Assembly (NCBI GenBank): GCA_002269645.1
Contig: NIVC01004187.1
Location: forward strand, 1-56,115
Direction: 5' to 3'
DNA length: 56,115 bases
Source of the DNA: Macrostomum lignano
Taxonomy: Eukaryota
The notes under the pieces were generated by a model. The model had not been told where the DNA came from. It saw only the letters and a list, made by a program, of their open reading frames with translations, and searched no databases. The position numbers and the translations under genes are program-made. Shown here in pieces: positions 9,346 to 25,520 of the stretch (its first letter is position 1; each line of letters opens with the position of its first letter).

Positions 9346-10653
9346 TTCAATTCTCTTTTACGACACAGTTTCTGTTCTATCTCTGCTCACTTCACCCAAT
9401 TTTCCAGCTCTATCCATATCCGCTCCCCTTTCGTTACGCTCCAATTCTAACTCGTGACCTCCGACGAACCCGGAAAAATGATGCTAATCCAATAAATGCG
9501 AAAGGATGCCCCACAGTAGCGGAATGCTCGTAATATTGAATAGCTTCAAGGACAGATCCAGCTCGAGTCGTTTCACCTCGAGGTCTCACCTCGCGATCAC
9601 TCAGATGTCAAGTGAGACGTTTTGTTTCAATCGGCATGTTTCTCTAATTAATTTTCCGAGAGAGTGAGACCCGCTAGTCAGCTTACCGCTGAGGAAGATG
9701 AAAAACAACAGGTGGACTTTAGAGTAACTCGGTCGTTGGTGAACTCTCTGAGCCTTAGCGAACGAACGAAGCCCCCCGGCCGAGGAATTCCAGGTGAGAT
9801 TTCAAAGTGAGGACAGACCCGCTGAAAACACGGAGGTGACGGTCGGCAGCAAGTTGAGCAAAACAAACTGCCCGGATGTCTTAGAATGAGCTTACCGGTA
9901 ATTACGGCCCACGGAAGGCATTCGACGTCAACGAATGACGCAAATGAATTAACACATCGACAGGAAATGACCTAATTGGGGAATCACATGACTCCCACTG
10001 GATAGGGTGGTGCCTATTCAGCTAATGCAAAACTTGGGCGGCCCCTATCCCTGATTGATGCCAGTTGCTGGCGCTAATCCGATCGGGCAGTCATTTGCAG
10101 TCAGAATGACTGACTTCAAAATACGGGTGGGATGAACTCCAACAGAAAAGCGCGTCATCGTGGCGTGCATCGGAACTGGGCTCGAGAGGCGGTGCAGCGC
10201 GCATTCAAATATTTTAAGCCCAGGCCAAATCCGAAACGATTTATAATCATCCTTCTTATAAATAATAAAAGAATAGCATAGAGACCTGTTTCAATATTCT
10301 TAAATTAGTTTTTTTGCGTGATTCAGAAATAAAGGAGAACCCGACAACGCAATTAGGCACCCCGATGCCAACTGGCTGTGGGCTGATGCAGTTAACGCGT
10401 GATGCAGCGGCTTCATCATTAATTCCGCAGAAAGTGCTCACCTACTTACCTCTCTGAAAGGACAACTATGGCCTGGTTTGAACCTGTTGATTGCCTGACT
10501 TCTTGTCAAAAACCCAGATTAAAACAATTACTCACCGGGCCAACAGTGCAGCGGAACGGGAGTGCCCGGGGCAACGGCTGGCTCTGAGTAGAAACTGGCG
10601 GAGCCTGCATTGTTGTGACGCCTCAAGCCCACAGCTGCCCTCTCTCCAATCTG

Positions 10654-10897
<244 letters not shown>

Positions 10898-13820
10898 CAA
10901 TTAGCTGGACTAATTAACCTTAATTATATTTCTTTAGAGCAAATGCCTTTTTGTGGACTCAGCTGTTTTGCCCCATATTGAATATATTTGTCTTTTTTTT
11001 AGGTCAATTATTTCAATATTGGTATACGGCACTGCTTTAGCCTCTTGCTGCAACTGGTTAAGGATTCCTGAACAAGCGGATTCTGCAAAGAGCTTCGTAG
11101 TAAAAGTTAATTTCTTACTGAAGATTAAGCTCAGATTTTTAGTGGCCTACCTACTTTGAGTAGAGTTTGCTGAAAAAACATTTCTGTACATATGGGTCAA
11201 TGAGAATTGCTCGGCAGGCAAATCTCCCGAGGGCGATTCTCATGCTCCCTGCAAGACTTTGGTGATCTTTGGTGAATGCAAGTGATTGTCAGAGTTGAGC
11301 AGGGATATGACTGCAAGAACAATTTTACATGTACAGCGGCTAAGTGCCTAAGGGACTGAAGTACTTTATAAAGGACTGCCTAAAAGTAGTACCTATAGGT
11401 TTGTAAAGTACATTTAAGTGCCTTAGAGGTTTGTAAAGTGTCTTGTACGTCTGAATGTCAATTCCAAGCTTTCGGAATACACTTAAAGGTAATGTTAAAA
11501 TTTTAGCCGCGCGCTTGTAATTTATTGTCATTAACTTGTTTTTAAAGAGTTTATACGGAGTTATGAGCTAATACTTTATTTTAAAATTTTATATTAAGAT
11601 GTTCATGAAAAGCTAGAAACGTTAAACTAAAAAATGAGTCCCTATTGTAACAGACCTAAATGATTTGCTTTAAATTTGTTTAAGGCAAAATGCAAATTGC
11701 TTAGCTTAGCTTAATTTTGCTTTAACTTGTAATTTTTGGCTAACTTTGCCTAACATTAGTAGCACAAGCACAGATATATTCATGTATATGAAAAGAGTTC
11801 TTTTTATTAAGTAACTGCGAGGGTAAACGTAAAAAACACTGACAAAAATCATGTACCAGCAAATGAGCGTCCCGTTAAACATTGCCCCGATAAACCCTAT
11901 ACCAGCCACATGCGCAGGCTTAATTCATTTTCTGCTCAAAAACCAAAAGTATACATGTAAGCCAACGTGCTGGAGAAAACATTTAGTGTCTCAATCAATC
12001 ACATCAGGGGCTTTTTAAAAATTTGAGCTCACATTACTTTTTGTTGAGTTCACAATCATCCGCTTCCGGTACATTTTTTTACCGCTCCTGGTGAATTTTT
12101 GAACAGTATGGATCAAGTATTCAATATCAGTATGGACTGAAAAAATAAAGCGTTAATAGAAGATAGGTAAAATGATATTTCAAGGATCGGAACAACGTAT
12201 TTGTATGTATTAATAGTAAAGCTAAATCATGATAATTACAGGTTAGCTTTTATTTCAAAAGCTATTCCCTGTCAAAACGAACATGACGCAACTCAAAGAG
12301 TGTATGAACTCAACGGTGCCAACCAGACAGTAGCCAACCCGGACCCTTATTATGAACTAAATCCTTATACTTTGTTTCTAATAAGTAAGAGGGCATTTAA
12401 GTTTCGAGAATTCTGTTTATCACCTTTTTATTAAGAAATCGAAATAAAACTTCAATAATTAACTTTGTTAATTGTTAAAACGCTGGAAATTTTATACAAT
12501 TTTTTTAAGTTAGAAGAAAAAGAAAAAATTGCATGGCAAGTTCCATCATAACTGCAATAAGCGCACTAAGACCACTTAAGGAATTAGCCCATAAAATTCA
12601 TGGCCATGACATACAGTACAGGCTAACAGGTGCCAGGAAACAAGTCGGCCGGGCCCCACTGACACAGTCGGGGACGTTAAAATTATTCTATTTAAACATA
12701 CTTTTATGCGCTTTTCTGTAAATTGTAACAGACCCAGGGGCCAGGGCTATGTAAATATGCATTATTTTATTATTGTTTCAATGACTAGGCCTATGAACTG
12801 CATTCCGGTAAGGTATCTCTTAACAACAAATAAGATAGCATAGTTTATGATATTTTGCCTAAAAGTAGTGTTGCTTTTGCAGATTTTTGTCTTTTGATAA
12901 AGCCTACTAAAAAAAGTTTAGGCCTATATAATTATAATTATAGGATAGATATTGCCATATCGGAATATCTTTGGCTTTGCCACTTTTGTATTGAAGTCTT
13001 GGTTAGGAATTGATCTCTTATAATTATATTAGCCTATGCTTCTCAATTATTAATCAGGTCAAGACTCAGCCTATCCGGTCAATTTTGGTTTTGTAAGTTT
13101 CTTAACTTACAAAGTTCAAATACAATAAGACAGTGGGATACTACTTGGCATGTTATGTATGTATTTTTTGTTTCTTTATCTAATTAGAATGAGTATAAAC
13201 TCTTCTTTAATGTGTATTTTTTGTTTCTACTAAAACATTTTCTATGCTTTGCAATTTCATTTTAAAAATAGTATTTTACAATTTTTTATATAATTCAATA
13301 ACCTTACAGTGACCTCACTGGAGTCCCTAACAATAGTAGGGCCTATCTAGACTCTAGATAATATACATGTATGCCAGAAAATTCCAGTGTACAGAGAGAC
13401 CTAGAATATACCATTGGCATATAACTTGGGGTATAGAAAGGCTTGGCATGTCTTCTTGGTATATAGCTTAGCATATAAAGATTACCGAGATCAGTGCTGG
13501 GCAGTAACTAGTTAATTGTTTAACTAGTTAATTAACTAGTTAAATTTTTTTTAAATCATTAAATTTTTGTTAAATTTTTTATGTATTAACTAGTTAACAA
13601 AAATCATTAATTTTTTTCTGTAAGTTAAAGTTAAATGACAAAAGTTAATAATTCCGGGAAATGGAGTTCCCCGGGTTCAAAATCCGTGGGTTTCAACAGC
13701 TTGTATGCCATTTAAAAGTAAAATTAATACATACTTAAAATAATTTCGCCTTTCTAAGCATTATTTAACGTGTCACAAACTATTATATGTATATTATTTC
13801 AGTTACAAGTTATAATGTAT

Positions 13821-13850
13821 AGAATATTCTGGAAGATTCTGGAATCTTCA
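13821..13850. promoter_or_regulatory. Six-unit perfect heat-shock element inside the hAT element
   Basis: aGAAt aTTCt gGAAg aTTCt gGAAt cTTCa = six contiguous alternating nGAAn pentamers. Confidence 0.6.
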
Positions 13851-14006
13851 ACTATTATCTATTGATATTCTACCCAAGGACTACTAGAAGTTATTGTTGT
13901 ATACATGTAATGATTCTGCCTTTCCTGCTGCGCTGCTCCGCATCGCGCTGCATAGATATTTCCTTGTCGCGTTGCACCATACTGTGCCATGTCGCGCCGC
14001 CGCGCG

Positions 14007-14160
14007 ACTTCCCGCGCTGCCGCACAACCTCCCGCACCGCCGTGCAACTTCCCGCGTTGCCGCACGACCTCCCGCACCGCCGTGCAACTTCCCGCGCTGC
14101 CGCACGACCTCCCGCACCGCCGTGCAACTTCCCGCGTTGCCGCACGACCTCCTGCACTGC
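14007..14160. repeat. GC-rich 40-bp tandem repeat (~4 copies) in the core of the hAT element
   Basis: ACTTCCCGCG(C/T)TGCCGCAC(A/G)ACCTCCCGCACCGCCGTGCA; starts spaced exactly 40 bp. Confidence 0.9.
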
Positions 14161-16077
14161 ATCGCGCCACCGCGTGCCGCGACCTGGCCACAGCCGTGCC
14201 GCACCGACCTGAAATTTAAAAAATGCGCCAGACACATGTCCAGGAAAATGTCACTTTTTCTGTTAGGGTTAAAATTAACATCCTCATACATATATTTCAT
14301 GGCTGAGAGAGCTTGCTAAATAACAAAAGGCGACCCTATATTATTAATATTATTAACTTGAAATTTTTAACTTTTCAGAAGTAAAATTTTGAGAAAATGT
14401 TAAATAATTAACTAGTTACAGTTAATTTTTTTGGAGCAATTGAATTAACTTTTTAACTTTTAACGAGTTAAAAAAATTGATTAACTTGCCCAGCACTGGC
14501 CGAGATAGTAAGTGAGACTAAGTTCTAATTTCCAATCAATGTACACATTTGGACAGGGAACAAAAATGATTGTTTTTATTTGGCATTGTTATCATATACA
14601 TAGATAGTAGTTAAATTGTGATAAAAAAGAATAGCTCTTGGCTCTTAAAAAAAAACTAAATTTTAGAAGTTAAAAATAAAACAAAAATAGTTAAAATGAA
14701 CTAGTTCTATTATATGGTTTAGTAAAAAATTTACTAGTTTTTACTTTTTGCTTTTTAAGTATTAAAATTTTGCAAGCAGTTTATATTTGTAAAGTCATAA
14801 TTTTTAATTTTTATTTTGGTATATTTTTGTATATAATAGAAAGTTTGTTGGCTACAGAAACAATTTTCATTTTGGTATACATTGATATAAAATCCTGACC
14901 CTAGAATATCATCCATTATTTTAGCATTGGTTTAGAAAATAAAAATAGACCTATCCAATGTTTAAATCTATCTATATAAAACCTCTAAAGTTACATTTGC
15001 CATGCAATTTTACTTAGTTTTGACCAAAAATATTAATTTTTAACTTAGGCTATTTAAGTCTCTTTTCCATTTTGACTTGAATCTTTTTGTTACTATCTTG
15101 TTTTTTATTTTTTGTTGTCAATTTTGCAACTTAGCCTTGATTTGCCATAATTTATGCTAACTAGATTGGCTAGGTCAGCTAGCAATTGCTTGTACTAATC
15201 AGGAAGGCATAATTTGCATTGGAATAAATTTTAGGAGAACAATCTGTGCATTATCTATATACTTTTATGCATTGATTTTATATAGCTTTTATAAACCTAT
15301 AGCTATAAAACTATATATTGTAGTATATATAGAAATAAAAATGAAAATGCAAGTTGAAAGAACAAATAATTGTTTTATAACAAATTTGCCAAAAAATATA
15401 TATTATATATAATAACTTTAATATGTTTCCAATTTTCTTTTTTTTACAAAAAGAACCAAGTCTAGAATCTATTAAAAGCTATTATTCTTTTCAATATATA
15501 ATTACTTAATTATATTATATTATATTATATTTAATTATATTCAATATATAATTATAATAATGCATAGTGATTAAATTTGTTTTAATAAATATATATAATG
15601 TATTCAGATAATTATCTATATTATCAAGTTTTAACTTGCCTACTTGATGTATACATGTAAGAATAAATTATATCTATGAGTATGAGCTATATTAAGATGC
15701 AATAATATTGGCATATGTATGTATAAGAGCTATTTGTTATATATAGTTGTCATTTGGATATTACTTAATTTTGACCATTGCTTTGCTCCATGGGTTAGAT
15801 AAGAAAGCAATATGATATATTTAAGTTACAATATCAGCTGAAGCACATAATCTGTTGCACCTTCAGTAAGTCAATGACCTTATATACATGAACCACAAGC
15901 ATTGTAATCATATACCTATTGTCAGGCTTACAGCTTTAGCAGTTATTTGAAGTTTGCAAATTGAAGCCAGCTGGCTCAGTTCCTGTTATTAATAGTTACA
16001 GGCTTGTACTATTGCAATATTGCCTATTGGTTTCTTGAACCTGATGAAAGAAACAAATCCTAGACTTTGCTTATCTC

Positions 16078-16450
16078 TGAATAGTATGCTCACTGCTTCA
16101 GCTACTCACCTAGAGTCTGCTCATCTGAATAGTATGCTCCCTGCTTCAGCTACTCACCTAGACTGTGCTCATCTCTGAATAGTATGCTCCCTGCTTCAGC
16201 TACTCACCTAGACTGTGCTCATCTCTTAATAGTATGCTCCCTGCTTCAGCTACTCACCTAGAGTCTGCCCATCTGAATAGTATGCTCCCTGCTTCAGCTA
16301 CTCACCTAGAGTCTGCCCATCTGAATAGTATGCTCCCTGCTTCAGCTACTCACCTAGAGTCTGCCCATCTGAATAGTATGCTCCCTGCTTCAGCTACTCA
16401 CCTAGACTGTGCTCATCTCTGAATAGTATGCTCCCTGCTTCAGCTACTCA
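16078..16450. repeat. 48-50-bp tandem repeat (8 copies) directly upstream of RFC5
   Basis: Unit TGAATAGTATGCTCCCTGCTTCAGCTACTCACCTAGAGTCTGCCCATC; ends ~15 nt before the ATG. Confidence 0.95.
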
Positions 16451-16464
16451 TCCCAGCTGAAGCC

Positions 16465-17335
16465 ATGCCCGAGTCAGGCACACCAGCATCTCGCATTGCC
16501 GATGCGGCAGCCAGCAGCGGCAACCTGCCCTGGATTGAAAAGTACAGGCCTAAGCAGCTGGACGATCTCATGTCCCATCGCGACATTGTGTCCACCATTC
16601 AGCGCTTCCTGTCTGAGGGCCGCCTGCCGCACCTGCTGTTCTACGGGCCGGCTGGCGTTGGCAAGACCAGCACCATCCTGGCCATTGCTGGGCAGATCTA
16701 CTCCAAGCGGGAGTTCCCCACTATGGTGCTGGATTTGAACGCGTCGGACGAGAGAGGCATCGGAGTGGTGCGCAACGAGATTCTCACCTTCGCCAGCACG
16801 CGCACAGTGTTCAGCGCCGGCTTCAAGCTGGTCATCCTTGACGAAGCCGACGCCATGACCAAGGACGCGCAGAATGCGCTGCGCAGGATTATGGAGAAAT
16901 TTACAGCCAACGTCCGGTTCTGCCTGGTGTGCAACTACCTGTCCAAGATCATCCCGGCGCTGCAGTCCCGCTGCACCCGGTTCCGCTTCGCCCCGCTGCC
17001 CTCCGACTCCGTGGCCGCTCGGGTCCGCGACATCGCCGTCGCCGAGGGCGCCAACCTGGATGAGGCCGGCTGCCGGGCGCTGGTCCGCCTGTCCGGTGGC
17101 GACATGCGCCGGGCGTTGAACATCCTGCAGAGCACGGCGCTCGCCTTCCCAGCTGGCGTCGACGAGGCCGCCGTGTACGCCTGTGTCGGGCACCCGTCGC
17201 CTGCCGACATTCGCCGGGTGCTGCAGCACCTCATGAACGAGGAGGCCCCGGCTGCGCACGCCGCAATCCGGGAATTGTGCGCCGACCGCGGCGTCGCCCT
17301 GCTGGACGTTGTCACCGAGCTGCACGAGCTGCTGG
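16465..17335 (+). CDS. RFC5: Replication factor C small subunit 5 (RFC36 / yeast Rfc3 type), exon 1
   Basis: LPWIEKYRP, Walker A GPAGVGKT, LNASDERG, Walker B VILDEAD, AQNALRR, SRC motif, GDMRRALN; close match to metazoan RFC5. Donor G|GTAGGG at 17336. Confidence 0.95.
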
Positions 17336-17345
17336 GTAGGGCCAT

Positions 17346-17887
17346 ATCCCGTTGGAAATGTTACCGTGACAAGCATCGCTAGAGTCATTGCAAACAACTC
17401 ACCAGTGACTCAGGGCGACTCTTGTGACTTTTTTGAACCACTCAAACTGACTGTATTGCGATGGAAAGGCAACTGTTGAGCTGAGAGCGCATCACAAGAG
17501 TTGTAGAATCGTAAGATTTGCGAAAAAGTCGTCCAGAAAGTTGTGTAGACGCTTAACTTTCTACTAACTCAAGTAGACTAAACAGAGTTATCAATTTAAA
17601 ATGCGATTCTAATCCATAAAGTGACGCAGATGCGCTTTAGACTAAACTCTGATTCTACAGCGACTCTGGCACGCCTCAGATACGACTCAACGTCCCCAGG
17701 GTAGCTTCATTGTCACAGACAATAAAATGCCTTAAATTGACTCTTAGGCGATTTTTTTGGCGACTTGTACCGTGGCATCTCGTCGTTTTAGAGTTGTCTA
17801 GAGTCTCTTCTTGTATCCTATTTTACCTGTTGTTACCTGCAATGACTTTGGGACGCTTCTTGGCTTAGGTACCGTTTTCATCGGGTT
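17346..17887. mobile_element. Possible degenerate foldback/MITE relic in the RFC5 intron
   Basis: Imperfect ~55-60-bp inverted arms: atcccgttggaaatgttacc...agtcattgcaaacaac versus the reverse complement of 17829..17887 (aacccgatgaaaacggtacc...agtcattgcaggtaacaac). No clear TSD. Confidence 0.4.
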
Positions 17888-17981
17888 CGCCAACTTGCCA
17901 ATATATTTATGTAATAGATCGCCTACTAAACAGTAGCAGAGAGAAGAAAGCAGCTTATTTTACATCTCGTGCAATCCGCAG

Positions 17982-20900
17982 TGACGTGACGCGAAAGTCA
18001 GGAATTGAATGTTGTTTGAACGAGTATAAATTCTTGCGATATATTTGCAGTAGTAGAATAGTCTAAGTTGCTTGACGAGACACAGATCGAGAGCAATGGT
18101 TTAAATATTGCAACCATTGAAAATATTGAAGTGGAGTATTGAACTATATTGATGCACTGCATGATTGAGCAAGTGGAGGGACTTAAGGGGCGTGGCAAGG
18201 CTAGAGCAATGATGTACACTGAATTGCACAGAGTACGCATTGGTTTACAGAGTACATAGAAGTTTAGCATTGAATAAAGTTAAGTGACTGAGTTAGCAGA
18301 ATAAAGTTAAGCAAAAAACCGCACACAGTTACCCATGCTAGCAAACCAACGAACCGTCACTTCATCTCCCCCCTTCGAATCGAGCTGGCGGCAGGCCCCT
18401 TGTCGAACGAACCGGATAGCGAGGCAGCTTCACCGGCGAGAGGCCGGCGGTCGGCTGCGGCCGATGCAACTCGGTAGCCTCCCCGCCCTGCAGTCCGGTG
18501 ATTTCACCGTCCTCAGCGGCTGCAGTAGCGGTGTCGCTGCCACTGCTGCTCACGTCACTTTGGCAGCTGGTTTGCGGCTGCATCGTATACTCGTCCGTGG
18601 CGCGGGAGGTTGCCGGATCATCGGCTCCGGCCTCGATGCGTTCACTCAGCTGGTCTGCATGCGCCAGGACGGTGCGACCGCCTTGGCGGGCGATGATGGC
18701 CGTGTTCGTCCCTTTCTGACATAGAAACTCGGCCGGCTCGCGCTCCAGCCCTGCGCCCGGTGCGTACCAGATGTTGGCTCTAATTGGCGTCTTCATTGTG
18801 ATAGGATTGCGAAGCTGCCGTCCCATGAGCTGTGCTGGACTTTGGGCCCGACCGGCGTGGGGAATGCACCTGTAATTGAGTAGGAGTCTGAACAGGAATG
18901 AGTCGTACGGCTCCGACGCTTGGTCCCAGGCCGCCGACGCCCTCTTGATCGAGCCAACCATCCGCTCCGCAAGTCCGTTCGATTGCGGATGCCTTGGAGG
19001 AGTTTTGAGGGCTCGACAGCCAATTCGCTCAAGCCAGGACAGCAGTCCAGCGTCGTGATACTCAGCGGCATTATCGCTAACTAGGACGTGCGGGACACCG
19101 TTTCTAGCGAATACTGACTGAAGAGCGGCCTTAACAGTCGCAGCATCGCGGTTTGGTACTCTCAGGACCTCAGGCCATCCCGACATTGCATCGACTAGAA
19201 TGAGCACCAGTCCAACCTTCGGGATTGTGGCGTGGTCCATATGCACGCGATGCCACGGTTCGTCTTCCTTTGGCCACTGATGTACCGTAGGTGTGCCGGA
19301 AGGCCGAATTCGCGTGCAGGTGGGGCAGTTGCGCACGTGCCGCTCCACATCCGTGCAATATCCTGGCCACCAGGCCGAGTTGCGGATGAGTGCGCGAGTT
19401 GCCATGGCTCCCTGATGCGAGTCATTGTGTACCTGATCCAGGACACGCTGCCTGAGTGTCGCAGGAATCACCGGTCGATCGCCGTAGCAGAGAATGCCGT
19501 CGTCTATCACTAAGGCATGGCGAACTGACTTGTACGGTCTCTCAGCTGGGGAGCATCCTGACCATCTGCTTGATGCGACTCGCTCAGCAATATCTTGGAG
19601 TAGACGATCGCGCTGGGTCTCTGCTTGCAGCTCCACCCATGGAATCACCGGGCTGCCAGCCCAATGAACCAGACCTTCCAAGGCAGCAGGTTCTGATTCG
19701 GATAGTTCACCGTCGCATTCAAGGCGAGAGAGAGCATCAGCGTGTGGAATGTGCTCGCCTTTTGTGTAGATCGTGTCAAAATCGAAGGCCATTAGCTTGA
19801 TCGCCCAGCGAAGTAGCCGAGCGTTCGCCACCTTTGGAAGTTGCCGCCGCGCTCCGAAGAGAAACTCTAGAGGCCGATGATCTGTCCGTAGAGTGAATCG
19901 GGCACCGAGAAGGAACTGCTTGGCGCGTTCCATCGCCCAAACGATGGCGAGGGCTTCTCTTTCGATATTCGAATAGCGCGATTCCGTGCTGCTCAACCGT
20001 CTGCTAAGGTATATAACCGGGTGGCCGTTTTGGGTGAGCACAGTGGCGATGGCCCTCTCACTGGCATCCGTGGTAAGAGTCGTCTCCTTGGTCTTGTCGT
20101 AGGGCTGTAGGACTGGCGCACTGCTAAGAATGGCTTTGATTCTCTCGAAGGCCTGAGTCTGATCGGCTCCCCAACTGAACCTTGCGTTCTTGGTTCGTAA
20201 CCGGTTGAGTGGCTCGATGATCTGTGAGTAGTTGCGAATGAATCTGCCAAAAAAGTTGGCAAGGCCAAGAAAAGATTCTAGTTGCTTCTTGTCTCCAGGA
20301 GTCTTGACGGCGCGAATCCGATCGACCAGATTTGGATCAGGAGAAATTCCTCTCTCGCTGACTCTGTACCCGAGAAATGAGACCTCCCTAGCCTTGAGGG
20401 TTGATTTTTCCAAGTTGATTGACATTCCTGCCTTCTTTAGGATAGCTATGACATTTTGGACCTTTGAGTCGATCTCTGAGTCAGATTTTCCGCCGAGAAG
20501 AATGTCGTCCTGATAAACTATCTTGCCGGTGATGTCGGCAAGGACTGATTCCATTGCCTTTTGAAAGATAGATGATGCTGATTTGAGGCCTGGAACGAGA
20601 CGCTTATAGCGATAGAGGCCCAAAGGTGTGGCGATGGTGGTGATCTCTCTGCTGTCTTCGTCCAGCTCTATCTGTAAATAAGCATCTGAAAGGTCGATTT
20701 TCGAGAAGTGCGACATTCCAGAGGTCTCCGCAAAGATTGTCTCCATCTCAGGCATCGGGTACGTATCGTTGTACACCTGATGATTAACTCCTGCTTTGAA
20801 GTCAGCACAGACGCGCACCTTTCCGTTAGGTTTCAGCACGCTGACAATTGGTGAGGCCCACTGACTCCCTCCGGCTGGAACAGGCTCGATTATCTGCTCA

Positions 20901-22617
20901 GCCTCCATTCGCCTGAGCTCCTCGTTAACCCGGTCTCGCAGGTGAATTGGAACGGGCCTAGCTGCGCAGTAAAACGGTTTTGCTCCATCAACAAGGCGAA
21001 TCTTGGCTTTGAAGTTTTTGAGACATCCTAGTTGGCCGACAGCGTTGATTGTAATAGCGTCCCCTTGCAGCTTGATGACGTCCATTCCCAGCAGTCCATG
21101 TGGTTTGCTGGCCTCCGTGACGATTAAGTCCAGTGTGACAAAGTTGGTGTCGGTTTCTAGGGAGGCAGTGAATTCTCCTAGACAGGAAATGCTGGATCCG
21201 TCGTACTGCCTGAGTGTTCGCCTGCACTTCCTGAGAGAAGGGCGGCCGAGCTTGACCCACAGATTTTGCGGAAGTAGACTCACCTCGGCGCCCGTGTCAA
21301 TCTGCATAGGCAGGGTCCGACCATTGATCTTCGCCTCGTGAAAGACTCCGTTGCTACGCCCGGGAGTGACCACAAAAATGTCGGCTGGCCCTTGGTCCTG
21401 ATTCTCATGATCGCCTGTCGATTCTCCTTGGGTCAAGTGCACTTCTCTGGATCTGCAGACCGCAGCAAAATGATTCTTCCGTTTACACTTGGTGCACCTG
21501 TGACCAAAAGCGGGGCAACTGCCTTTGGGGTGAGTTGTACCGCAGTAATAGCACCTGCCTTTACCAGCTGCTCCTGGAGACTTGGCTGCTGCACCAGTCG
21601 TTCTTGGTTGCCCTGCAAAAGCGATCTCCAGGGGGACGGGCGCGCCTGATGAAGCGCTGTTGGTTGTGCCTTTGTTATATTGTTGAATTTGCTCGAGCTG
21701 CTGCAGGTTTTGCAGGATATCATCAAGAAGTTTTTCTTCGCCTTGAAGCTGCTCCAAAATTCTCTTCTTGTGTTCGGGAGAGGCAAGGCCGTCGATTAGT
21801 CTCATCGCGATGAGGTCGTTTTCCTTGGACTGCTTGGCCCCAAGTTCCTCGAATTCGCAAAGCGCCGCCGCTGCTCGAAGCCGACGATAGTAAGTGCTGA
21901 TCGATTCACCTGGCTCTTGCTTCAGGCTTAGAAATCTGGTGCGCTCAGCGATGACCAGCCTTTTCTTAGGTCGGATTGTTGCTGTAACTAGTGTCTCGAT
22001 TTCGCTAAATTTGAGTGCCTCCAGCTTTTTTGGTGCAGCCATCAGAGAGAGCGTCCGGATCGCCTGTAGTCCAGCCTTGGACAGGAACAAGTCAGTCTTA
22101 TCCCGCGCTTCGTCCGTGTCCGTAAGTTTCTTAATGCGGGCTGTGGCGGAGAGCTGCTGCATCCATGCCTCAGCGAGTTCAGGATCGTTGAGGTTGAGTT
22201 CTTGACTCCGAATTTCGCCTGCTTGCGACGCCATTGACGTGACGCGAAAGTCAGGAATTGAATGTTGTTTGAACGAGTATAAATTCTTGCGATATATTTG
22301 CAGTAGTAGAATAGTCTAAGTTGCTTGACGAGACACAGATCGAGAGCAATGGTTTAAATATTGCGACTATTGAAAATATTGAAGTGGAGTATTGAACTAT
22401 ATTGATGCACTGCATGATTGAGCAAGTGGAGGGACTTAAGGGGCGTGGCAAGGCTAGAGCAATGATGTACACTGAATTGCACAGAGTACGCATTGGTTTA
22501 CAGAGCACATAGAAGTTTAGCATTGAATAAAGTTAAGTGACTGAGTTAGCAGAATAAAGTTAAGCAAAAAACCGCACACAGTTACCCATGCTAGCAAACC
22601 AACGAACCGTCACTTCA
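17982..22617 (-). mobile_element. Full-length Ty3/gypsy (Mag-like) LTR retrotransposon, 4636 bp
   Basis: Two 383-bp LTRs (17982..18364, 22235..22617) with TG...CA ends and 3 mismatches; perfect 5-bp TSD CGCAG; PBS TGGCGTCGCAAGCAGG (22233..22218); PPT GAAGGGGGGAGA (18376..18365). Confidence 0.98.
18362..22234 (-). CDS. Gag-Pol polyprotein, single uninterrupted ORF of 1290 aa
   Basis: Paired zinc knuckles CYYCGTTHPKGSC / CTKCKRKNHFAAVC; protease IDTGAEVS; RT YQDD; RNase H TDAS...EREALA; integrase HHCC and D-D-E (HMDH, SDNA, GLAER). Order PR-RT-RH-IN indicates gypsy. Confidence 0.97.
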   Translation of the reverse strand: MASQAGEIRSQELNLNDPELAEAWMQQLSATARIKKLTDTDEARDKTDLFLSKAGLQAIRTLSLMAAPKKLEALKFSEIETLVTATIRPKKRLVIAERTRFLSLKQEPGESISTYYRRLRAAAALCEFEELGAKQSKENDLIAMRLIDGLASPEHKKRILEQLQGEEKLLDDILQNLQQLEQIQQYNKGTTNSASSGAPVPLEIAFAGQPRTTGAAAKSPGAAGKGRCYYCGTTHPKGSCPAFGHRCTKCKRKNHFAAVCRSREVHLTQGESTGDHENQDQGPADIFVVTPGRSNGVFHEAKINGRTLPMQIDTGAEVSLLPQNLWVKLGRPSLRKCRRTLRQYDGSSISCLGEFTASLETDTNFVTLDLIVTEASKPHGLLGMDVIKLQGDAITINAVGQLGCLKNFKAKIRLVDGAKPFYCAARPVPIHLRDRVNEELRRMEAEQIIEPVPAGGSQWASPIVSVLKPNGKVRVCADFKAGVNHQVYNDTYPMPEMETIFAETSGMSHFSKIDLSDAYLQIELDEDSREITTIATPLGLYRYKRLVPGLKSASSIFQKAMESVLADITGKIVYQDDILLGGKSDSEIDSKVQNVIAILKKAGMSINLEKSTLKAREVSFLGYRVSERGISPDPNLVDRIRAVKTPGDKKQLESFLGLANFFGRFIRNYSQIIEPLNRLRTKNARFSWGADQTQAFERIKAILSSAPVLQPYDKTKETTLTTDASERAIATVLTQNGHPVIYLSRRLSSTESRYSNIEREALAIVWAMERAKQFLLGARFTLRTDHRPLEFLFGARRQLPKVANARLLRWAIKLMAFDFDTIYTKGEHIPHADALSRLECDGELSESEPAALEGLVHWAGSPVIPWVELQAETQRDRLLQDIAERVASSRWSGCSPAERPYKSVRHALVIDDGILCYGDRPVIPATLRQRVLDQVHNDSHQGAMATRALIRNSAWWPGYCTDVERHVRNCPTCTRIRPSGTPTVHQWPKEDEPWHRVHMDHATIPKVGLVLILVDAMSGWPEVLRVPNRDAATVKAALQSVFARNGVPHVLVSDNAAEYHDAGLLSWLERIGCRALKTPPRHPQSNGLAERMVGSIKRASAAWDQASEPYDSFLFRLLLNYRCIPHAGRAQSPAQLMGRQLRNPITMKTPIRANIWYAPGAGLEREPAEFLCQKGTNTAIIARQGGRTVLAHADQLSERIEAGADDPATSRATDEYTMQPQTSCQSDVSSSGSDTATAAAEDGEITGLQGGEATELHRPQPTAGLSPVKLPRYPVRSTRGLPPARFEGGR

Positions 22618-22622
22618 CGCAG

Positions 22623-22807
22623 GTCGGGTGGACTTTCCCGTGTCCGTGCGGGCGCACTTTTACATCCGTCTGGCCGACATCGAGGAGCGACTTTGCGCCG
22701 GCGCCACCGACCGGCTACAGCTTAGCGCCCTAATTGGCGCCGCTATGGAGGCTCGCGAGCTGCTTCTGATGGAGAAGGAGAAGCTGGATCGCGAGGCTGG
22801 ACAGTGA
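22623..22807 (+). CDS. RFC5: RFC5 terminal exon (missed by the ORF track)
   Basis: After cacgcAG (22621-22622) it reads (G)RVDFPVSVRAHFYIRLADIEERLCAGATDRLQLSALIGAAMEARELL...AGQ*, matching the RFC5 C-terminus (VDFP...MADIEYRL...IQLSSLI). Phase joins exon 1 (G|GT); total 351 aa. Confidence 0.92.
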
Positions 22808-23030
22808 ATTGATTGGTTCACTCTGTCAGTTTTGACCTAATCTAAAATTTGACTTAATTTCTGGAACAAAAACTGAATTCTCTACTCCTGTTTCATGCAA
22901 TTGCCATCTTGCTCATCACTTTCTTTGCTCTTCGCTCAGATCTCTGATGCCTCTATCTTTATTCTCAGATCCCTTTATCCCGAATTCCGATATCTGGGAT
23001 ATCCCAGATCTGTTTATTCTGAATTCCAAT

Positions 23031-24305
23031 CCCAGATCCCTTATCCCGAATTCCGATCCCAGATCCCTTATCCCGAATTCCGATCCCAGATCCCTTATCC
23101 CGAATTCCGATCCCAGATCCCTTATCCCGAATTCCGATCCCAGATCCCTTATCCCGAATTCCGATCCCAGATCCCTTATCCCGAATTCCGATCCCAGATC
23201 CCTTATCCCGAATTCCGATCCCAGATCCCTTATCCCGAATTCCGATCCCAGATCCCTTATCCCGAATTCCGATCCCAGATCCCTTATCCCGAATTCCGAT
23301 CCCAGATCCCTTATCCCGAATTCCGATCCCAGATCCCTTATCCCGAATTCCGATCCCAGATCCCTTATCCCGAATTCCGATCCCAGATCCCTTATCCCGA
23401 ATTCCGATCCCAGATCCCTTATCCCGAATTCCGATCCCAGATCCCTTATCCCGAATTCCGATTCCAGATCCCTTATCCCGAATTCCGATCCCAGATCCCT
23501 TATCCCGAATTCCGATCCCAGATCCCTTATCCCGAATTCCGATCCCAGATCCCTTATCCCGAATTCCGATCCCAGATCCCTTATCCCGAATTCCGATCCC
23601 AGATCCCTTATCCCGAATTCCGATCCCAGATCCCTTATCCCGAATTCCGATCCCAGATCCCTTATCCCGAATTCCGATCCCAGATCCCTTATCCCGAATT
23701 CCGATCCCAGATCCCTTATCCCGAATTCCGATCCCAGATCCCTTATCCCGAATTCCGATCCCAGATCCCTTATCCCGAATTCCGATCCCAGATCCCTTAT
23801 CCCGAATTCCGATCCCAGATCCCTTATCCCGAATTCCGATCCCAGATCCCTTATCCCGAATTCCGATCCCAGATCCCTTATCCCGAATTCCGATCCCAGA
23901 TCCCTTATCCCGAATTCCGATCCCAGATCCCTTATCCCGAATTCCGATCCCTTATCCCGAATTCCGATCCCAGATCCCTTATCCCGAATTCCGATCCCAG
24001 ATCCCTTATCCCGAATTCCGATCCCAGATCCCTTATCCCGAATTCCGATCCCAGATCCCTTATCCCGAATTCCGATCCCAGATCCCTTATCCCGAATTCC
24101 GATCCCAGATCCCTTATCCCGAATTCCGATCCCAGATCCCTTATCCCGAATTCCGATCCCAGATCCCTTATCCCGAATTCCGATCCCAGATCCCTTATCC
24201 CGAATTCCGATCCCAGATCCCTTATCCCGAATTCCGATCCCAGATCCCTTATCCCGAATTCCGATCCCAGATCCCTTATCCCGAATTCCTATCCCAGATC
24301 CCTTA
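23031..24305. repeat. 27-bp near-perfect minisatellite, ~47 copies
   Basis: Unit CCCAGATCCCTTATCCCGAATTCCGAT; one unit lacks 7 bp near 23948. Confidence 0.98.
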
Positions 24306-24814
24306 GCCAGATCCAATCCATGGTTCCTATGCCCAAAAGTTGTTTCTTTCTAAATTCGAGTGACTCTCAAGTTCTCACTGTTGCTACTTTACTCTGCATT
24401 TTCACAAATAAGTAACGCTTTTTATAACCTTGAAGTTCAAGTTTTCAAACAGCCAATATTTTCGTAATTTTTTTCTCTGCATTGTTTGTGTACTTTTATT
24501 TCATAGTATAGGAAAATATCAACACGTTGCATTTCTAAAGGGCACTACCACTACAGTGCACTAAATTGCATGAGCGAAATGTGTAGGCATTGAAAACAAA
24601 AGTACATTTCCGAGGTTTTCGTTGATATTGACACTGTATTGACTAACGGGCGTTATTTGACCCTCATGTTAGACTTCCAAGCTTAATTAAATGTAGAGAA
24701 GCACCCGCACTTATTGCCTTCCTCCACCTCCCTATTAAGATTAGTGTGGTTTATCAGGCATGTGTAATTAGTCAGACATACCATGGTTATTTAAGTCGGG
24801 TTCGTTACTCCCAG

Positions 24815-25250
24815 TGTACATTATAAACCAGGCTAGACACCCACCTCTCTCCCAATGTACATTATAAATTATGCTAGACACCCACCTCACTCCCAGTTTA
24901 CATTATAAACCAGGCTAGACACCCACCTCACTCCCAGTGTACATTATAAATCAGGCGACATCCACTTCACTCTCCCAGAGTACATTATAAATCAGGTGAC
25001 ATCCACTTCACTCTCCCAGTGTACATTATAAATCAGGCGACATCCACTTCACTCTCCCAGAGTACATTATAAATCAGGCGACATCCACTTCACTCTCCCA
25101 GTGTACATTATAAATCAGGCTAGACACCCACCTCACTTCCAGTGTACATTATAAATCCGGCTAGACACCCATCTCACTCCCAGTGTACATTATAAATCAG
25201 GCTAGACACCCACCTCACTCCCAGTGTACATTATAAATCAGGATAGACAC
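24815..25250. repeat. ~41-bp tandem repeat (~11 copies) carrying TATAAA, upstream of MFSD1-like
   Basis: CCCAGTGTACATTATAAATCAGGCTAGACACCCACCTCACT and variants. Confidence 0.92.
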
Positions 25251-25307
25251 CTATTGGTTGTCTCTGATGCTGTGATTGAGGTGAAGTTGAATTATTTAAT
25301 TGATGCC

Positions 25308-25430
25308 ATGGCTTGGGACCCAGAGAAGCCACAATTTCGCTTTACGGTGCTCGTGTTCACCTGCTTGCTGACTTTCGGCTCATATTTCTGCTTCGACATG
25401 CCCAGCGTATTGCAGTCCGCATTCACTGGG
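25308..25430 (+). CDS. MFSD1: MFSD1-like major facilitator transporter, exon 1
   Basis: MAWDPEKPQFRFTVLVFTCLLTFGSYFCFDMPSVLQ resembles MFSD1 TM1 (GFGSYFCYDNP); donor GTGAGC at 25431, phase 0. Confidence 0.85.
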
Positions 25431-25520
25431 GTGAGCCTCGGAGTTCGTATCCATAGCATCTGCATGTCTGTAGTAGAATGCTAAATTTTATGGCCATGAT
25501 CCTACAGTCAATGCCTATAG

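What the first reader, a model, noticed from the sequence alone, without database searches (positions are those of the whole stretch)
17336..22807. Intact retrotransposon inserted exactly into the RFC5 3' splice site; the TSD is the acceptor and the LTR is a ready gene trap
Seen: the 5-bp TSD CGCAG (17977..17981 and 22618..22622) is the end of the RFC5 intron. The native pyrimidine tract and AG now lie left of the element, while the terminal exon keeps only the duplicated CGCAG behind LTR sequence (...ccgtcacttcacgcAG). Splicing to the native AG gives G|TG ACG TGA (Val-Thr-stop), followed by two AATAAA in the antisense LTR (18273, 18300), which together form a complete premature terminal exon and remove ~60 C-terminal residues. 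Splicing to the right copy restores a full 351-aa protein and removes the element with the intron. Established: RFC5 is an essential clamp-loader subunit. Inference: the allele is either null/hypomorphic and buffered by another copy, or the LTR end works as a substitute acceptor that makes the insertion self-silencing, possibly a tunable splice switch.
Basis: partly seen in the sequence, partly recalled or inferred. Interest (0 to 1): 0.85.

Follow-up and report, generated by a model that had tools for sequence, protein, structure and literature searches.

The report
Retrotransposon at RFC5 splice acceptor
One of three copies of the DNA-replication gene RFC5 in the flatworm Macrostomum lignano carries a young, intact LTR retrotransposon inserted exactly at the end of its only intron; it is real and tidy, but it is an ordinary chance insertion that two untouched gene copies make harmless.

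Summary
The window is contig NIVC01004187.1 of Macrostomum lignano (Mlig_3_7). RFC5 has exon 1 at 16465-17335 and exon 2 at 22623-22807. A 4,636-bp antisense Ty3/Mdg4-type LTR retrotransposon sits at 17982-22617. Its 383-bp LTRs are 99.2% identical, and one intact 1,290-aa gag-pol ORF fills the interior. It is flanked by the 5-bp duplication CGCAG.

Two other RFC5 loci in the same assembly are empty sites (…TCCGCAG|GTCGGG…), so the duplicated 5 bases are the last 5 bases of the intron. Splicing to the left AG gives Val-Thr-stop. Splicing to the right AG gives the conserved 351-aa protein.

"Buffered by another copy" holds: all three copies encode identical proteins, matching the published S/L1/L2 three-subgenome structure. 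"Substitute acceptor" and "tunable splice switch" have no evidence. The GenBank model that splices across the element came from a pipeline that used multi-mapped reads, so it does not discriminate between copies.

About one such placement is expected by chance genome-wide. Two related elements show no acceptor-like target preference, and the LTR has no heat-shock elements.

Verdict: a recent insertion polymorphism of a known kind, of low interest. Its splicing outcome is undetermined.

The parts
16465..17335 (+). RFC5 exon 1 coding part (290 codons plus 1 nt). It holds Walker A (GPAGVGKT), Walker B (DEAD) and the SRC motif.
   Evidence: Translation. Best PDB match is human RFC5, 6vvo_C, E = 7.9e-126. 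Pfam AAA and DNA_pol3_delta2.
17336..17981 (+). Original RFC5 intron, 646 nt, running from GTAGGG to CGCAG. Its U-rich stretch cttatttt and its YTNAY branch candidates (A at -25 and -20) all remain left of the element.
17977..17981 (+). Left copy of the 5-bp target-site duplication CGCAG. This is the native 3' splice site.
   Evidence: It is single-copy at the empty sites L002 and L003.
17982..18364 (-). 3' LTR of the element, 383 bp. Read on the RFC5 strand it starts TGACGTGA, which gives the in-frame stop at 17987-17989 after Val-Thr.
18273..18305 (+). Two AATAAA hexamers on the RFC5 strand (18273-18278 and 18300-18305), inside a short internal duplication AATAAAGTTAAG.
   Evidence: About 0.5 hexamers per LTR are expected by composition.
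18365..18376 (-). Polypurine tract GAAGGGGGGAGA. It lies inside the ORF and is translated.
   Evidence: It is conserved in the relatives L004 and L005.
18362..22234 (-). Single gag-pol ORF of 1,290 aa with no internal stop.
- gag zinc knuckles at residues 228 and 247.
- Protease DTGA at 313.
- Reverse transcriptase YQDD at 574.
- RNase H TDAS at 722.
- Integrase HHCC at 936, plus the rve core domain.
- The stop TGA is the first 3 nt of the 3' LTR.
22219..22233 (-). Primer-binding-site-like sequence TGGCGTCGCAAGCAG, directly after the 5' LTR and overlapping the ATG of the ORF.
   Evidence: The identical 15-mer occurs at the same place in L004 and L005.
22235..22617 (-). 5' LTR of the element, 383 bp. 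On the RFC5 strand it carries AATAAA at 22526 and 22553 and ends ...ccgtcacttca.
22618..22622 (+). Right copy of the duplication CGCAG. It is the only acceptor that restores the reading frame.
22623..22807 (+). RFC5 exon 2: 61 codons plus the stop. This is the C-terminal half of the Rep_fac_C collar domain.
22669..22669 (+). Copy-specific synonymous SNP: T here, G in both empty copies. It lies 47 nt into exon 2 and, with G at 16746, is diagnostic for transcripts of this copy.

Best explanation
A recent insertion of an autonomous Ty3/Mdg4-type LTR retrotransposon landed, by chance, at the last five bases of the single intron of one of the three RFC5 paralogues of M. lignano DV1. It is antisense to the gene.

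The integrase's staggered cut duplicated CGCAG, so both junctions now carry an AG.

**Left site.** The left AG keeps the whole native upstream context: branch candidates, the U-rich stretch and CAG. It is also transcribed 4.6 kb earlier. Any mRNA that uses it ends after Val-Thr, and four AATAAA hexamers lie between the two acceptors.

**Right site.** The right AG keeps only CGCAG behind A/C-rich LTR sequence. It does keep the native terminal exon and the native 3' end.

**Inferred outcome.** This copy is most likely a hypomorph or null, with some residual correct splicing possible. It is tolerated because the two other copies encode the identical protein.

**Shown:** the insertion, the TSD, the empty sites, the intact element, the redundancy and both reading-frame outcomes.

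**Inferred:** which acceptor is used, and that the placement is a chance event.
For: - **Structure and TSD:**
- **Empty sites with a single CGCAG:**
- **Intact ORF with all catalytic motifs:**
- **Redundancy:** the three copies encode the same protein, and all 11 CDS differences are synonymous.
- **Synteny:** the same MFS_1 neighbour lies beside all three.
- **Three-paralogue genome:** the DV1 structure and the masking of deleterious variants by ploidy are published (PMC12896417). Redundancy of the assembly is noted.
- **Reading-frame outcomes:**
- **Acceptor contexts and hexamers:**
- **Chance:** about 0.9 such placements are expected genome-wide among full-length copies alone.
- **Target choice:** the relatives' TSDs CTATT and GGATT are unlike an acceptor.
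- **Precedent:** Alu insertions into the AG or pyrimidine tract of NF1 3' splice sites abolish use of the downstream exon despite their TSDs (PMC3219598). An antisense IAP in the last intron of mouse Dnmt3C excludes the last exon (PMC6466679).
Against: - No RNA evidence specific to this copy could be obtained, so the hypomorph/null inference is untested.
- In M. lignano the only motif enriched at cis acceptors is CAG (PMC8629364), and both copies keep it. The right site might therefore work better than vertebrate precedent suggests.
- Within 13 nt of the AG the right site is in fact more pyrimidine-rich (0.70 against 0.50).
- Antisense intronic LTR elements are generally the tolerated orientation (PMC6466679).
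- The GenBank model uses the right site, although that evidence does not discriminate between copies.
- This copy has only 2 copy-specific CDS changes, both synonymous. That gives no power to detect relaxed selection.
Confidence: 0.75

Rival explanations
1. The allele is silent. The right-hand CGCAG behind the LTR end is used efficiently, and the whole element is removed as part of a 5,287-nt intron. This copy then makes normal RFC5, as GenBank annotates it.
For: - GenBank CDS PAA48293.1 spans 16444-22807 and gives the full protein.
- M. lignano cis acceptors show only CAG as an enriched motif.
- The right site has a pyrimidine fraction of 0.70 over -13..-4.
- The native terminal exon and 3' end are intact.
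- Antisense orientation is the generally tolerated one.
Against: - The annotation pipeline used multi-mapping and dropped repeat-overlapping isoforms, so the model may come from reads of the empty paralogues.
- The left acceptor is untouched upstream and is transcribed first.
- No YTNAY branch candidate lies between -15 and -69 of the right AG.
- Two AATAAA hexamers lie 70-97 nt upstream of the right AG.
- In human NF1, insertions at the AG or pyrimidine tract cause loss of the downstream exon.
Confidence: 0.3
2. The insertion is a regulated ('tunable') splice switch, or a self-silencing design of this element family. Under this idea, choice between the two acceptors is controlled, or the LTR end has evolved to serve as an acceptor context.
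For: The geometry is the only support: two AGs, a stop and AATAAA after the first, and a moderately pyrimidine-rich antisense LTR end.
Against: - No other copy of the family is available in an intron to show a pattern.
- The relatives' TSDs are not acceptor-like.
- The LTR has no heat-shock elements, unlike the stress-responsive M. lignano families.
- The insertion is young and present in one of three copies, so there has been no time or need for a regulatory role.
- The placement is expected by chance.
Confidence: 0.03
3. It is an assembly artefact: a retrotransposon copy wrongly joined into an RFC5 haplotig.
For: - The Mlig_3_7 assembly is redundant and repeat-rich.
- Only about 64% of its bases were scored error-free by REAPR.
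- The contig is short, at 56 kb.
Against: - A misjoin would not create a perfect 5-bp duplication of the flanking sequence at both LTR ends.
- It would not leave flanks exactly colinear with two empty sites.
- The contig has its own SNPs and a 26-nt indel in the intron, so it is a distinct haplotype.
Confidence: 0.03

Closest known systems
Mouse Dnmt3C-IAP allele (IAP LTR element, last intron, antisense), and intronic IAP/ETn mutations in general
   Same: An LTR element lies in the last intron, antisense to the gene. The last exon can be excluded, giving a chimeric gene-LTR transcript with premature termination or polyadenylation in the element (PMC6466679; PMC1331978).
   Different: In the mouse case the element supplies the competing acceptor. 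Here the competing acceptor is the gene's own, and the element supplies only the stop and the AATAAA. The mouse effects are shown by RNA, while here they are only predicted. In addition, this gene has two intact paralogues.
De novo Alu insertions into the AG or pyrimidine tract of NF1 3' splice sites
   Same: A retroelement with a TSD sits exactly at a 3' splice site, one of them within the canonical AG (PMC3219598).
   Different: Those are non-LTR elements with 7-20 bp TSDs next to internal exons, so the result is exon skipping. Here the exon is terminal and cannot simply be skipped. Both TSD copies are complete CGCAG, and the host is a polyploid flatworm.
Drosophila white-apricot (copia in an intron of white) and maize waxy retrotransposon alleles
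   Same: An LTR retrotransposon lies in an intron and gives a mixture of truncated transcripts and correctly spliced read-through transcripts, that is, a leaky allele.
   Different: copia in w-a is in the sense orientation and mid-intron, with termination in its own LTR poly(A) site. Neither case has the TSD coinciding with the splice site.
Introner-type transposons, whose target-site duplication provides one splice site
   Same: The principle is shared: the duplication made on insertion supplies a splice-site dinucleotide at the element boundary, so the element can be removed exactly.
   Different: Introners are short non-autonomous DNA transposons that create new introns in exons and occur in thousands of copies. 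This is one autonomous 4.6-kb LTR element that enlarges an existing intron, with no sign of family-wide behaviour.
M. lignano Ty3/Mdg4 LTR retrotransposon families (Mag, CsRN1, Gmr1/Osvaldo clades)
   Same: The host is the same. The domain order PR-RT-RH-INT, the single ORF and the roughly 4.5-kb size fit the Ty3/Mdg4 families that dominate this genome (PMC12801592). Annotated relatives share 61-71% aa identity.
   Different: The clade and family were not assigned, because no reference set or family table was available. There is no HSE in the LTR, unlike the heat-induced families.

Membership tests
LTR retrotransposon, Ty3/Mdg4 (gypsy) superfamily | Two long terminal direct repeats ending TG...CA with short terminal inverted repeats | tested here: met
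   The LTRs are 383 bp with 380 of 383 bases identical. They read TGAAGTGACG...CGTCACGTCA in the sense orientation.
LTR retrotransposon, Ty3/Mdg4 (gypsy) superfamily | Short target-site duplication (4-6 bp) verified against an empty site | tested here: met
   The 5-bp CGCAG is duplicated here and single-copy in L002 and L003. The relatives also have 5-bp TSDs.
LTR retrotransposon, Ty3/Mdg4 (gypsy) superfamily | pol domain order protease - RT - RNase H - integrase (integrase after RT) | tested here: met
   Pfam places gag-asp_proteas at 300-388, RVT_1 at 467-625, RT_RNaseH at 713-817, Integrase_H2C2 at 923-978 and rve at 993-1083. Catalytic motifs are intact. This order alone does not exclude Bel/Pao; the RT_RNaseH and Integrase_H2C2 profiles and the closest named hits favour Ty3/Mdg4.
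LTR retrotransposon, Ty3/Mdg4 (gypsy) superfamily | Primer binding site after the 5' LTR and polypurine tract before the 3' LTR | tested here: inconclusive
   The polypurine tract GAAGGGGGGAGA is present and conserved. The PBS-like TGGCGTCGCAAGCAG is conserved in three elements. The matching tRNA was not identified, and there is no tRNA in the window.
LTR retrotransposon, Ty3/Mdg4 (gypsy) superfamily | Phylogenetic placement of RT within a named clade (Mag, CsRN1 and so on) | not tested
   No reference RT set was at hand, and the supplementary family table of PMC12801592 is not held.
RFC5 (human nomenclature; yeast Rfc3), clamp-loader small subunit | Best match among RFC subunits is RFC5, over the full length | tested here: met
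   Human RFC5 6vvo_C scores E = 7.9e-126 over residues 13-341. Yeast Rfc3 scores 1.7e-98, and the other subunits score 1e-64 or weaker. Metazoan RFC5 orthologues are about 60% identical.
RFC5 (human nomenclature; yeast Rfc3), clamp-loader small subunit | AAA+ module with Walker A, Walker B and the SRC arginine finger, plus the C-terminal collar domain | tested here: met
   GPAGVGKT, DEAD and SRC are all in exon 1. Pfam finds AAA at 57-177 and Rep_fac_C at 244-330.
RFC5 (human nomenclature; yeast Rfc3), clamp-loader small subunit | Essential function in clamp loading in this organism | not testable with these tools
   Inferred from orthology only.
Gene-trap-like premature terminal exon | Functional splice acceptor followed by an in-frame stop | tested here: met
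   This is met at sequence level only. The native acceptor context is intact, followed by G|TG ACG TGA.
Gene-trap-like premature terminal exon | Polyadenylation actually occurs downstream of the trap acceptor | not testable with these tools
   AATAAA occurs at 18273 and 18300. About 0.5 per LTR are expected by composition. No 3'-end data were accessible.
Insertion removed by splicing through a TSD-supplied splice site (introner-like behaviour) | The AG at the downstream element boundary comes from the TSD and restores the frame if used | tested here: met
Insertion removed by splicing through a TSD-supplied splice site (introner-like behaviour) | Transcripts of the filled allele are shown to use that AG | not testable with these tools
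   The GenBank model does not discriminate between copies. No expression record was found for Mlig026155.
Insertion removed by splicing through a TSD-supplied splice site (introner-like behaviour) | Family-wide pattern: many copies at splice sites or with splice-site-like TSDs | tested here: not met
   The test is weak, with n = 3. TSDs in element sense are CTGCG (this element), CTATT and GGATT. No further copies occur in the DNA held.

The most novel reading that the evidence does not exclude
In M. lignano, cis acceptors show little conserved signal beyond CAG. The 5-nt duplicated CGCAG behind the LTR end may therefore be enough for efficient splicing. An LTR insertion exactly on a 3' splice site would then be phenotypically silent.

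Insertions whose TSD includes the acceptor AG would form a general 'self-healing' class. The two competing acceptors could also give a leaky allele that depends on dosage or condition.
Probability: 0.2. Interest if true: 0.4.

Novelty: new member of a known kind. Interest (0 to 1): 0.2.

Why it matters
Taken as it stands, this is one more polymorphic LTR-retrotransposon insertion in a genome that is about 21% LTR elements, masked by polyploid redundancy.

It has modest value in three ways:
- It is a clean natural test case for how a flatworm spliceosome chooses between two identical AG sites, one with native and one with foreign upstream context. M. lignano has short acceptor signals and SL trans-splicing.
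- It is a worked example of a potentially disabling lesion in an essential gene carried on one subgenome of the S/L1/L2 system. This fits the published idea that ploidy masks deleterious variants.
- It is a warning that the GenBank CDS at this locus may describe a transcript that this copy does not make.

Tried and rejected
- **Other copies of the element.** I looked in the window and in the two paralogous loci to test target preference and found none. The protein database holds only relatives at 71% identity or less, because the GenBank annotation excluded repeat-overlapping genes.
- **ML2-assembly gene models.** I looked up P0123 and P0124 to see whether an independent assembly has the filled site. 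Neither is on record.
- **Expression data.** I searched paper texts and three sets of supplements for Mlig026155 and Mlig024015 and found nothing. The family table of the LTR paper is not held.
- **Heat-shock elements.** The LTR has none, which removes the idea of a heat-tunable switch.
- **tRNA for the PBS.** A tRNA scan of the window found none.
- **Different name prefix.** The prefix Mlig026155 versus Mlig024015 could have been evidence of a distinct transcript. I rejected it, because prefixes come from 95% clustering of whole transcriptional units, and the 3' flank with its 27-bp array is only about 86-90% identical between copies.
- **Dating from LTR divergence.** Three differences in 383 bp (0.8%) are too few. 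The flank divergence between copies ranges from 0 to 1.1% and the copies are mosaic, so no ordering is safe.
- **Quantitative splice-site scoring.** No M. lignano training set or MaxEnt tables were available. I made only simple composition and motif counts.
Full report
**Source and gene.** The window is the whole 56,115-bp contig NIVC01004187.1 of the Macrostomum lignano assembly Mlig_3_7, GCA_002269645.1.

The gene has an ATG at 16465, and exon 1 ends at 17335. The donor GT is at 17336, and exon 2 runs 22623-22807 including the stop. The spliced product is 351 aa.

Its best solved relative is human RFC5 (6vvo_C, E = 7.9e-126, residues 13-341). Yeast Rfc3 follows, and the other RFC subunits are far weaker. 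Metazoan RFC5 proteins are about 60% identical.

The alignment to human RFC5 runs without a gap across the exon junction (GRVDFPVSVR against HRVDFPSSVR). GenBank annotates the same join as PAA48293.1, BOX15_Mlig026155g1, gene range 16444-22807.

**The element.** Two 383-bp direct repeats lie at 17982-18364 and 22235-22617. They differ at three positions and begin TG and end CA. CGCAG flanks them at 17977-17981 and 22618-22622.

The element lies on the minus strand, antisense to RFC5. Its 3,870-nt interior is one open reading frame of exactly 1,290 codons. Pfam finds domains in this order:
- aspartic protease
- reverse transcriptase
- RNase H
- integrase zinc-binding domain
- integrase core

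The motifs DTGA, YQDD and TDAS, the HHCC finger and two gag zinc knuckles are all present. It is therefore a structurally intact Ty3/Mdg4-type element. I did not assign a clade.

The LTR has no heat-shock elements. This sets it apart from the heat-induced M. lignano families described in PMC12801592.

**Proof that the duplication is the acceptor.** The protein cluster holds two further GenBank proteins from other contigs of the same assembly. Their loci are L002 (NIVC01000604.1) and L003 (NIVC01000149.1). The genes there span only 1,701 and 1,703 bp, next to the same MFS_1 neighbour.

When the window, minus the element and one CGCAG, is aligned with them, all three are colinear through the site. 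All three read TGCAATCCGCAG|GTCGGGTGGAC. The empty sites have a single CGCAG, and it is the last five bases of the intron. This also argues strongly against a misassembly, because a false join would not generate a perfect duplication and colinear flanks.

**Consequences readable from sequence.** Splicing of 17335 to the left AG gives G|TG ACG TGA, which is Val-Thr-stop. That removes 61 residues, the second half of the Rep_fac_C collar domain (residues 244-330).

It also occurs at 22526 and 22553 in the other LTR, 70-97 nt upstream of the right acceptor. The 3.9-kb interior has none. About 0.5 per LTR is expected from composition, and the pair arises from a short internal duplication.

The left acceptor keeps all native upstream sequence, including a U-rich stretch and YTNAY branch candidates at -25 and -20. 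The right acceptor has A/C-rich LTR sequence and no YTNAY between -15 and -69. It is, however, more pyrimidine-rich in the last 13 nt.

In M. lignano the only motif enriched at cis acceptors is CAG, and donors are GT[G/A]AG (PMC8629364). Both AGs therefore carry the local consensus.

From sequence alone the outcome cannot be decided. I lean towards predominant use of the left site, for these reasons:
- It has an intact context.
- It is transcribed first.
- Four AATAAA hexamers lie between the two acceptors, before the native terminal exon.
- Vertebrate precedent points the same way.

The native terminal exon and 3' end may still favour the right site.

**Why the GenBank model does not settle it.** The annotation pipeline worked as follows:
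- It mapped a de novo transcriptome with BLAT and kept hits within 1% of the best.
- It mapped RNA-seq with STAR and allowed 1,000 multimaps.

Exon 1 of this copy differs from L002 at two positions. Exon 2 differs from both paralogues only at 22669, which is 47 nt from the junction. Junction reads from the empty copies would therefore map here too, and a truncated exon1-LTR isoform would have been discarded. I found no expression record for this gene identifier.

**Redundancy.** The three copies encode identical proteins. All 11 CDS differences among them are synonymous, and two are specific to this copy.

Upstream of the gene the window is 99.2-99.7% identical to L003 but only 85-88% identical to L002. 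In the CDS it is closer to L002, with 3 differences against 10 to L003. This is a mosaic pattern that suggests exchange between copies.

[quoted passage not shown] One is on the diploid S chromosomes, and one is on each of the isolated L1 and L2 copies of the large chromosome. The same work states that higher ploidy masks deleterious variants (PMC12896417). The assembly is known to be redundant.

**Chance or targeting.** The published figures are 72,846 genes, 4.9 introns of about 1.1 kb each, a 764-Mb assembly and 1,928 full-length LTR elements. About half of random insertions fall in introns.

On these figures, about 0.9 full-length copies genome-wide should have a TSD equal to the last 5 nt of an intron. 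About 3.6 should have a TSD that contains the AG. Fragments and solo LTRs would add more.

Two related elements at 61-71% aa identity (L004 and L005) have 5-bp TSDs CTATT and GGATT, against CTGCG here in element sense. None resembles an acceptor. The sample is tiny, but nothing calls for targeting.

**Comparison with known cases.**
- Retroelement insertions exactly in 3' splice sites are documented in NF1, where they abolish use of the downstream exon (PMC3219598).
- Intronic LTR elements that cause aberrant splicing and premature polyadenylation are the main class of spontaneous mouse mutations. One example is an antisense IAP in the last intron of Dnmt3C that excludes the last exon. Antisense insertions are generally the tolerated orientation (PMC6466679; PMC1331978).
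- Use of a TSD as a splice site is the principle of introner transposons. This last point rests on my own knowledge.

The present case is a new instance of these known kinds, not a new kind.

**Verdict.** It is a tidy, teachable example and a possible natural splice-competition assay. It is ordinary in mechanism and expected by chance in this genome.

Noticed in passing
window 18362-22234 (minus strand); L005 6001-9915: The element's ORF fills the whole internal region, 3,870 nt or exactly 1,290 codons. The ATG is the first base after the 5' LTR and overlaps the PBS-like TGGCGTCGCAAGCAG. The polypurine tract is translated (EGGR), and the stop TGA is the first three bases of the 3' LTR. The relative in L005 has the same layout.
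   Followed up: partly
L003 2370-5396, against window 11764/11765: The otherwise 99.2-99.7% identical L003 haplotype carries an insertion of about 3.0 kb. It has terminal inverted repeats CCCAGTGAAAAA...TTTTTCACTGGG and is absent from the window. It looks like a DNA-transposon insertion polymorphism between near-identical copies.
   Followed up: no
window 9410-17981 against L002 and L003: Relationships among the three RFC5 loci are mosaic. Upstream, the window is nearly identical to L003 and only 85-88% identical to L002. In the CDS it has 3 differences from L002 and 10 from L003, all synonymous. This suggests recombination or gene conversion between subgenome copies.
   Followed up: partly
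window 17343-17368: Just after the donor, this copy has 26 nt (CCATATCCCGTTGGAAATGTTACCGTGA region) that both empty copies lack. UniProt model A0A1I8J4N5, from the older ML2 assembly, reads through this window-type segment using an alternative donor GTGACA at 17366. A window-type haplotype therefore exists in an independent assembly.
   Followed up: partly
window 16076-16450 and 23001-24305: RFC5 is bracketed by tandem arrays. A 48-bp unit repeated 7.7 times ends 15 nt before the start codon. A 27-bp unit repeated 48.6 times starts about 190 nt after the stop codon. The downstream array is only about 86-90% identical between copies. The whole contig is dense in such arrays.
   Followed up: no
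window 22808-25500: There is no AATAAA on the gene strand for 2.7 kb after the RFC5 stop codon, only ATTAAA at 24686. The next gene, MFS_1, starts at about 25308 on the same strand. The true 3' end of RFC5 is unknown, and a shared transcriptional unit with MFS_1 is conceivable in this trans-splicing species.
   Followed up: no
L004 9519-9830: In the 71%-identical relative, the ORF stops at 9525, where a 24-bp tandem array of about 9 copies sits between the integrase end and the 3' LTR. That copy carries an internal tandem expansion.
   Followed up: no
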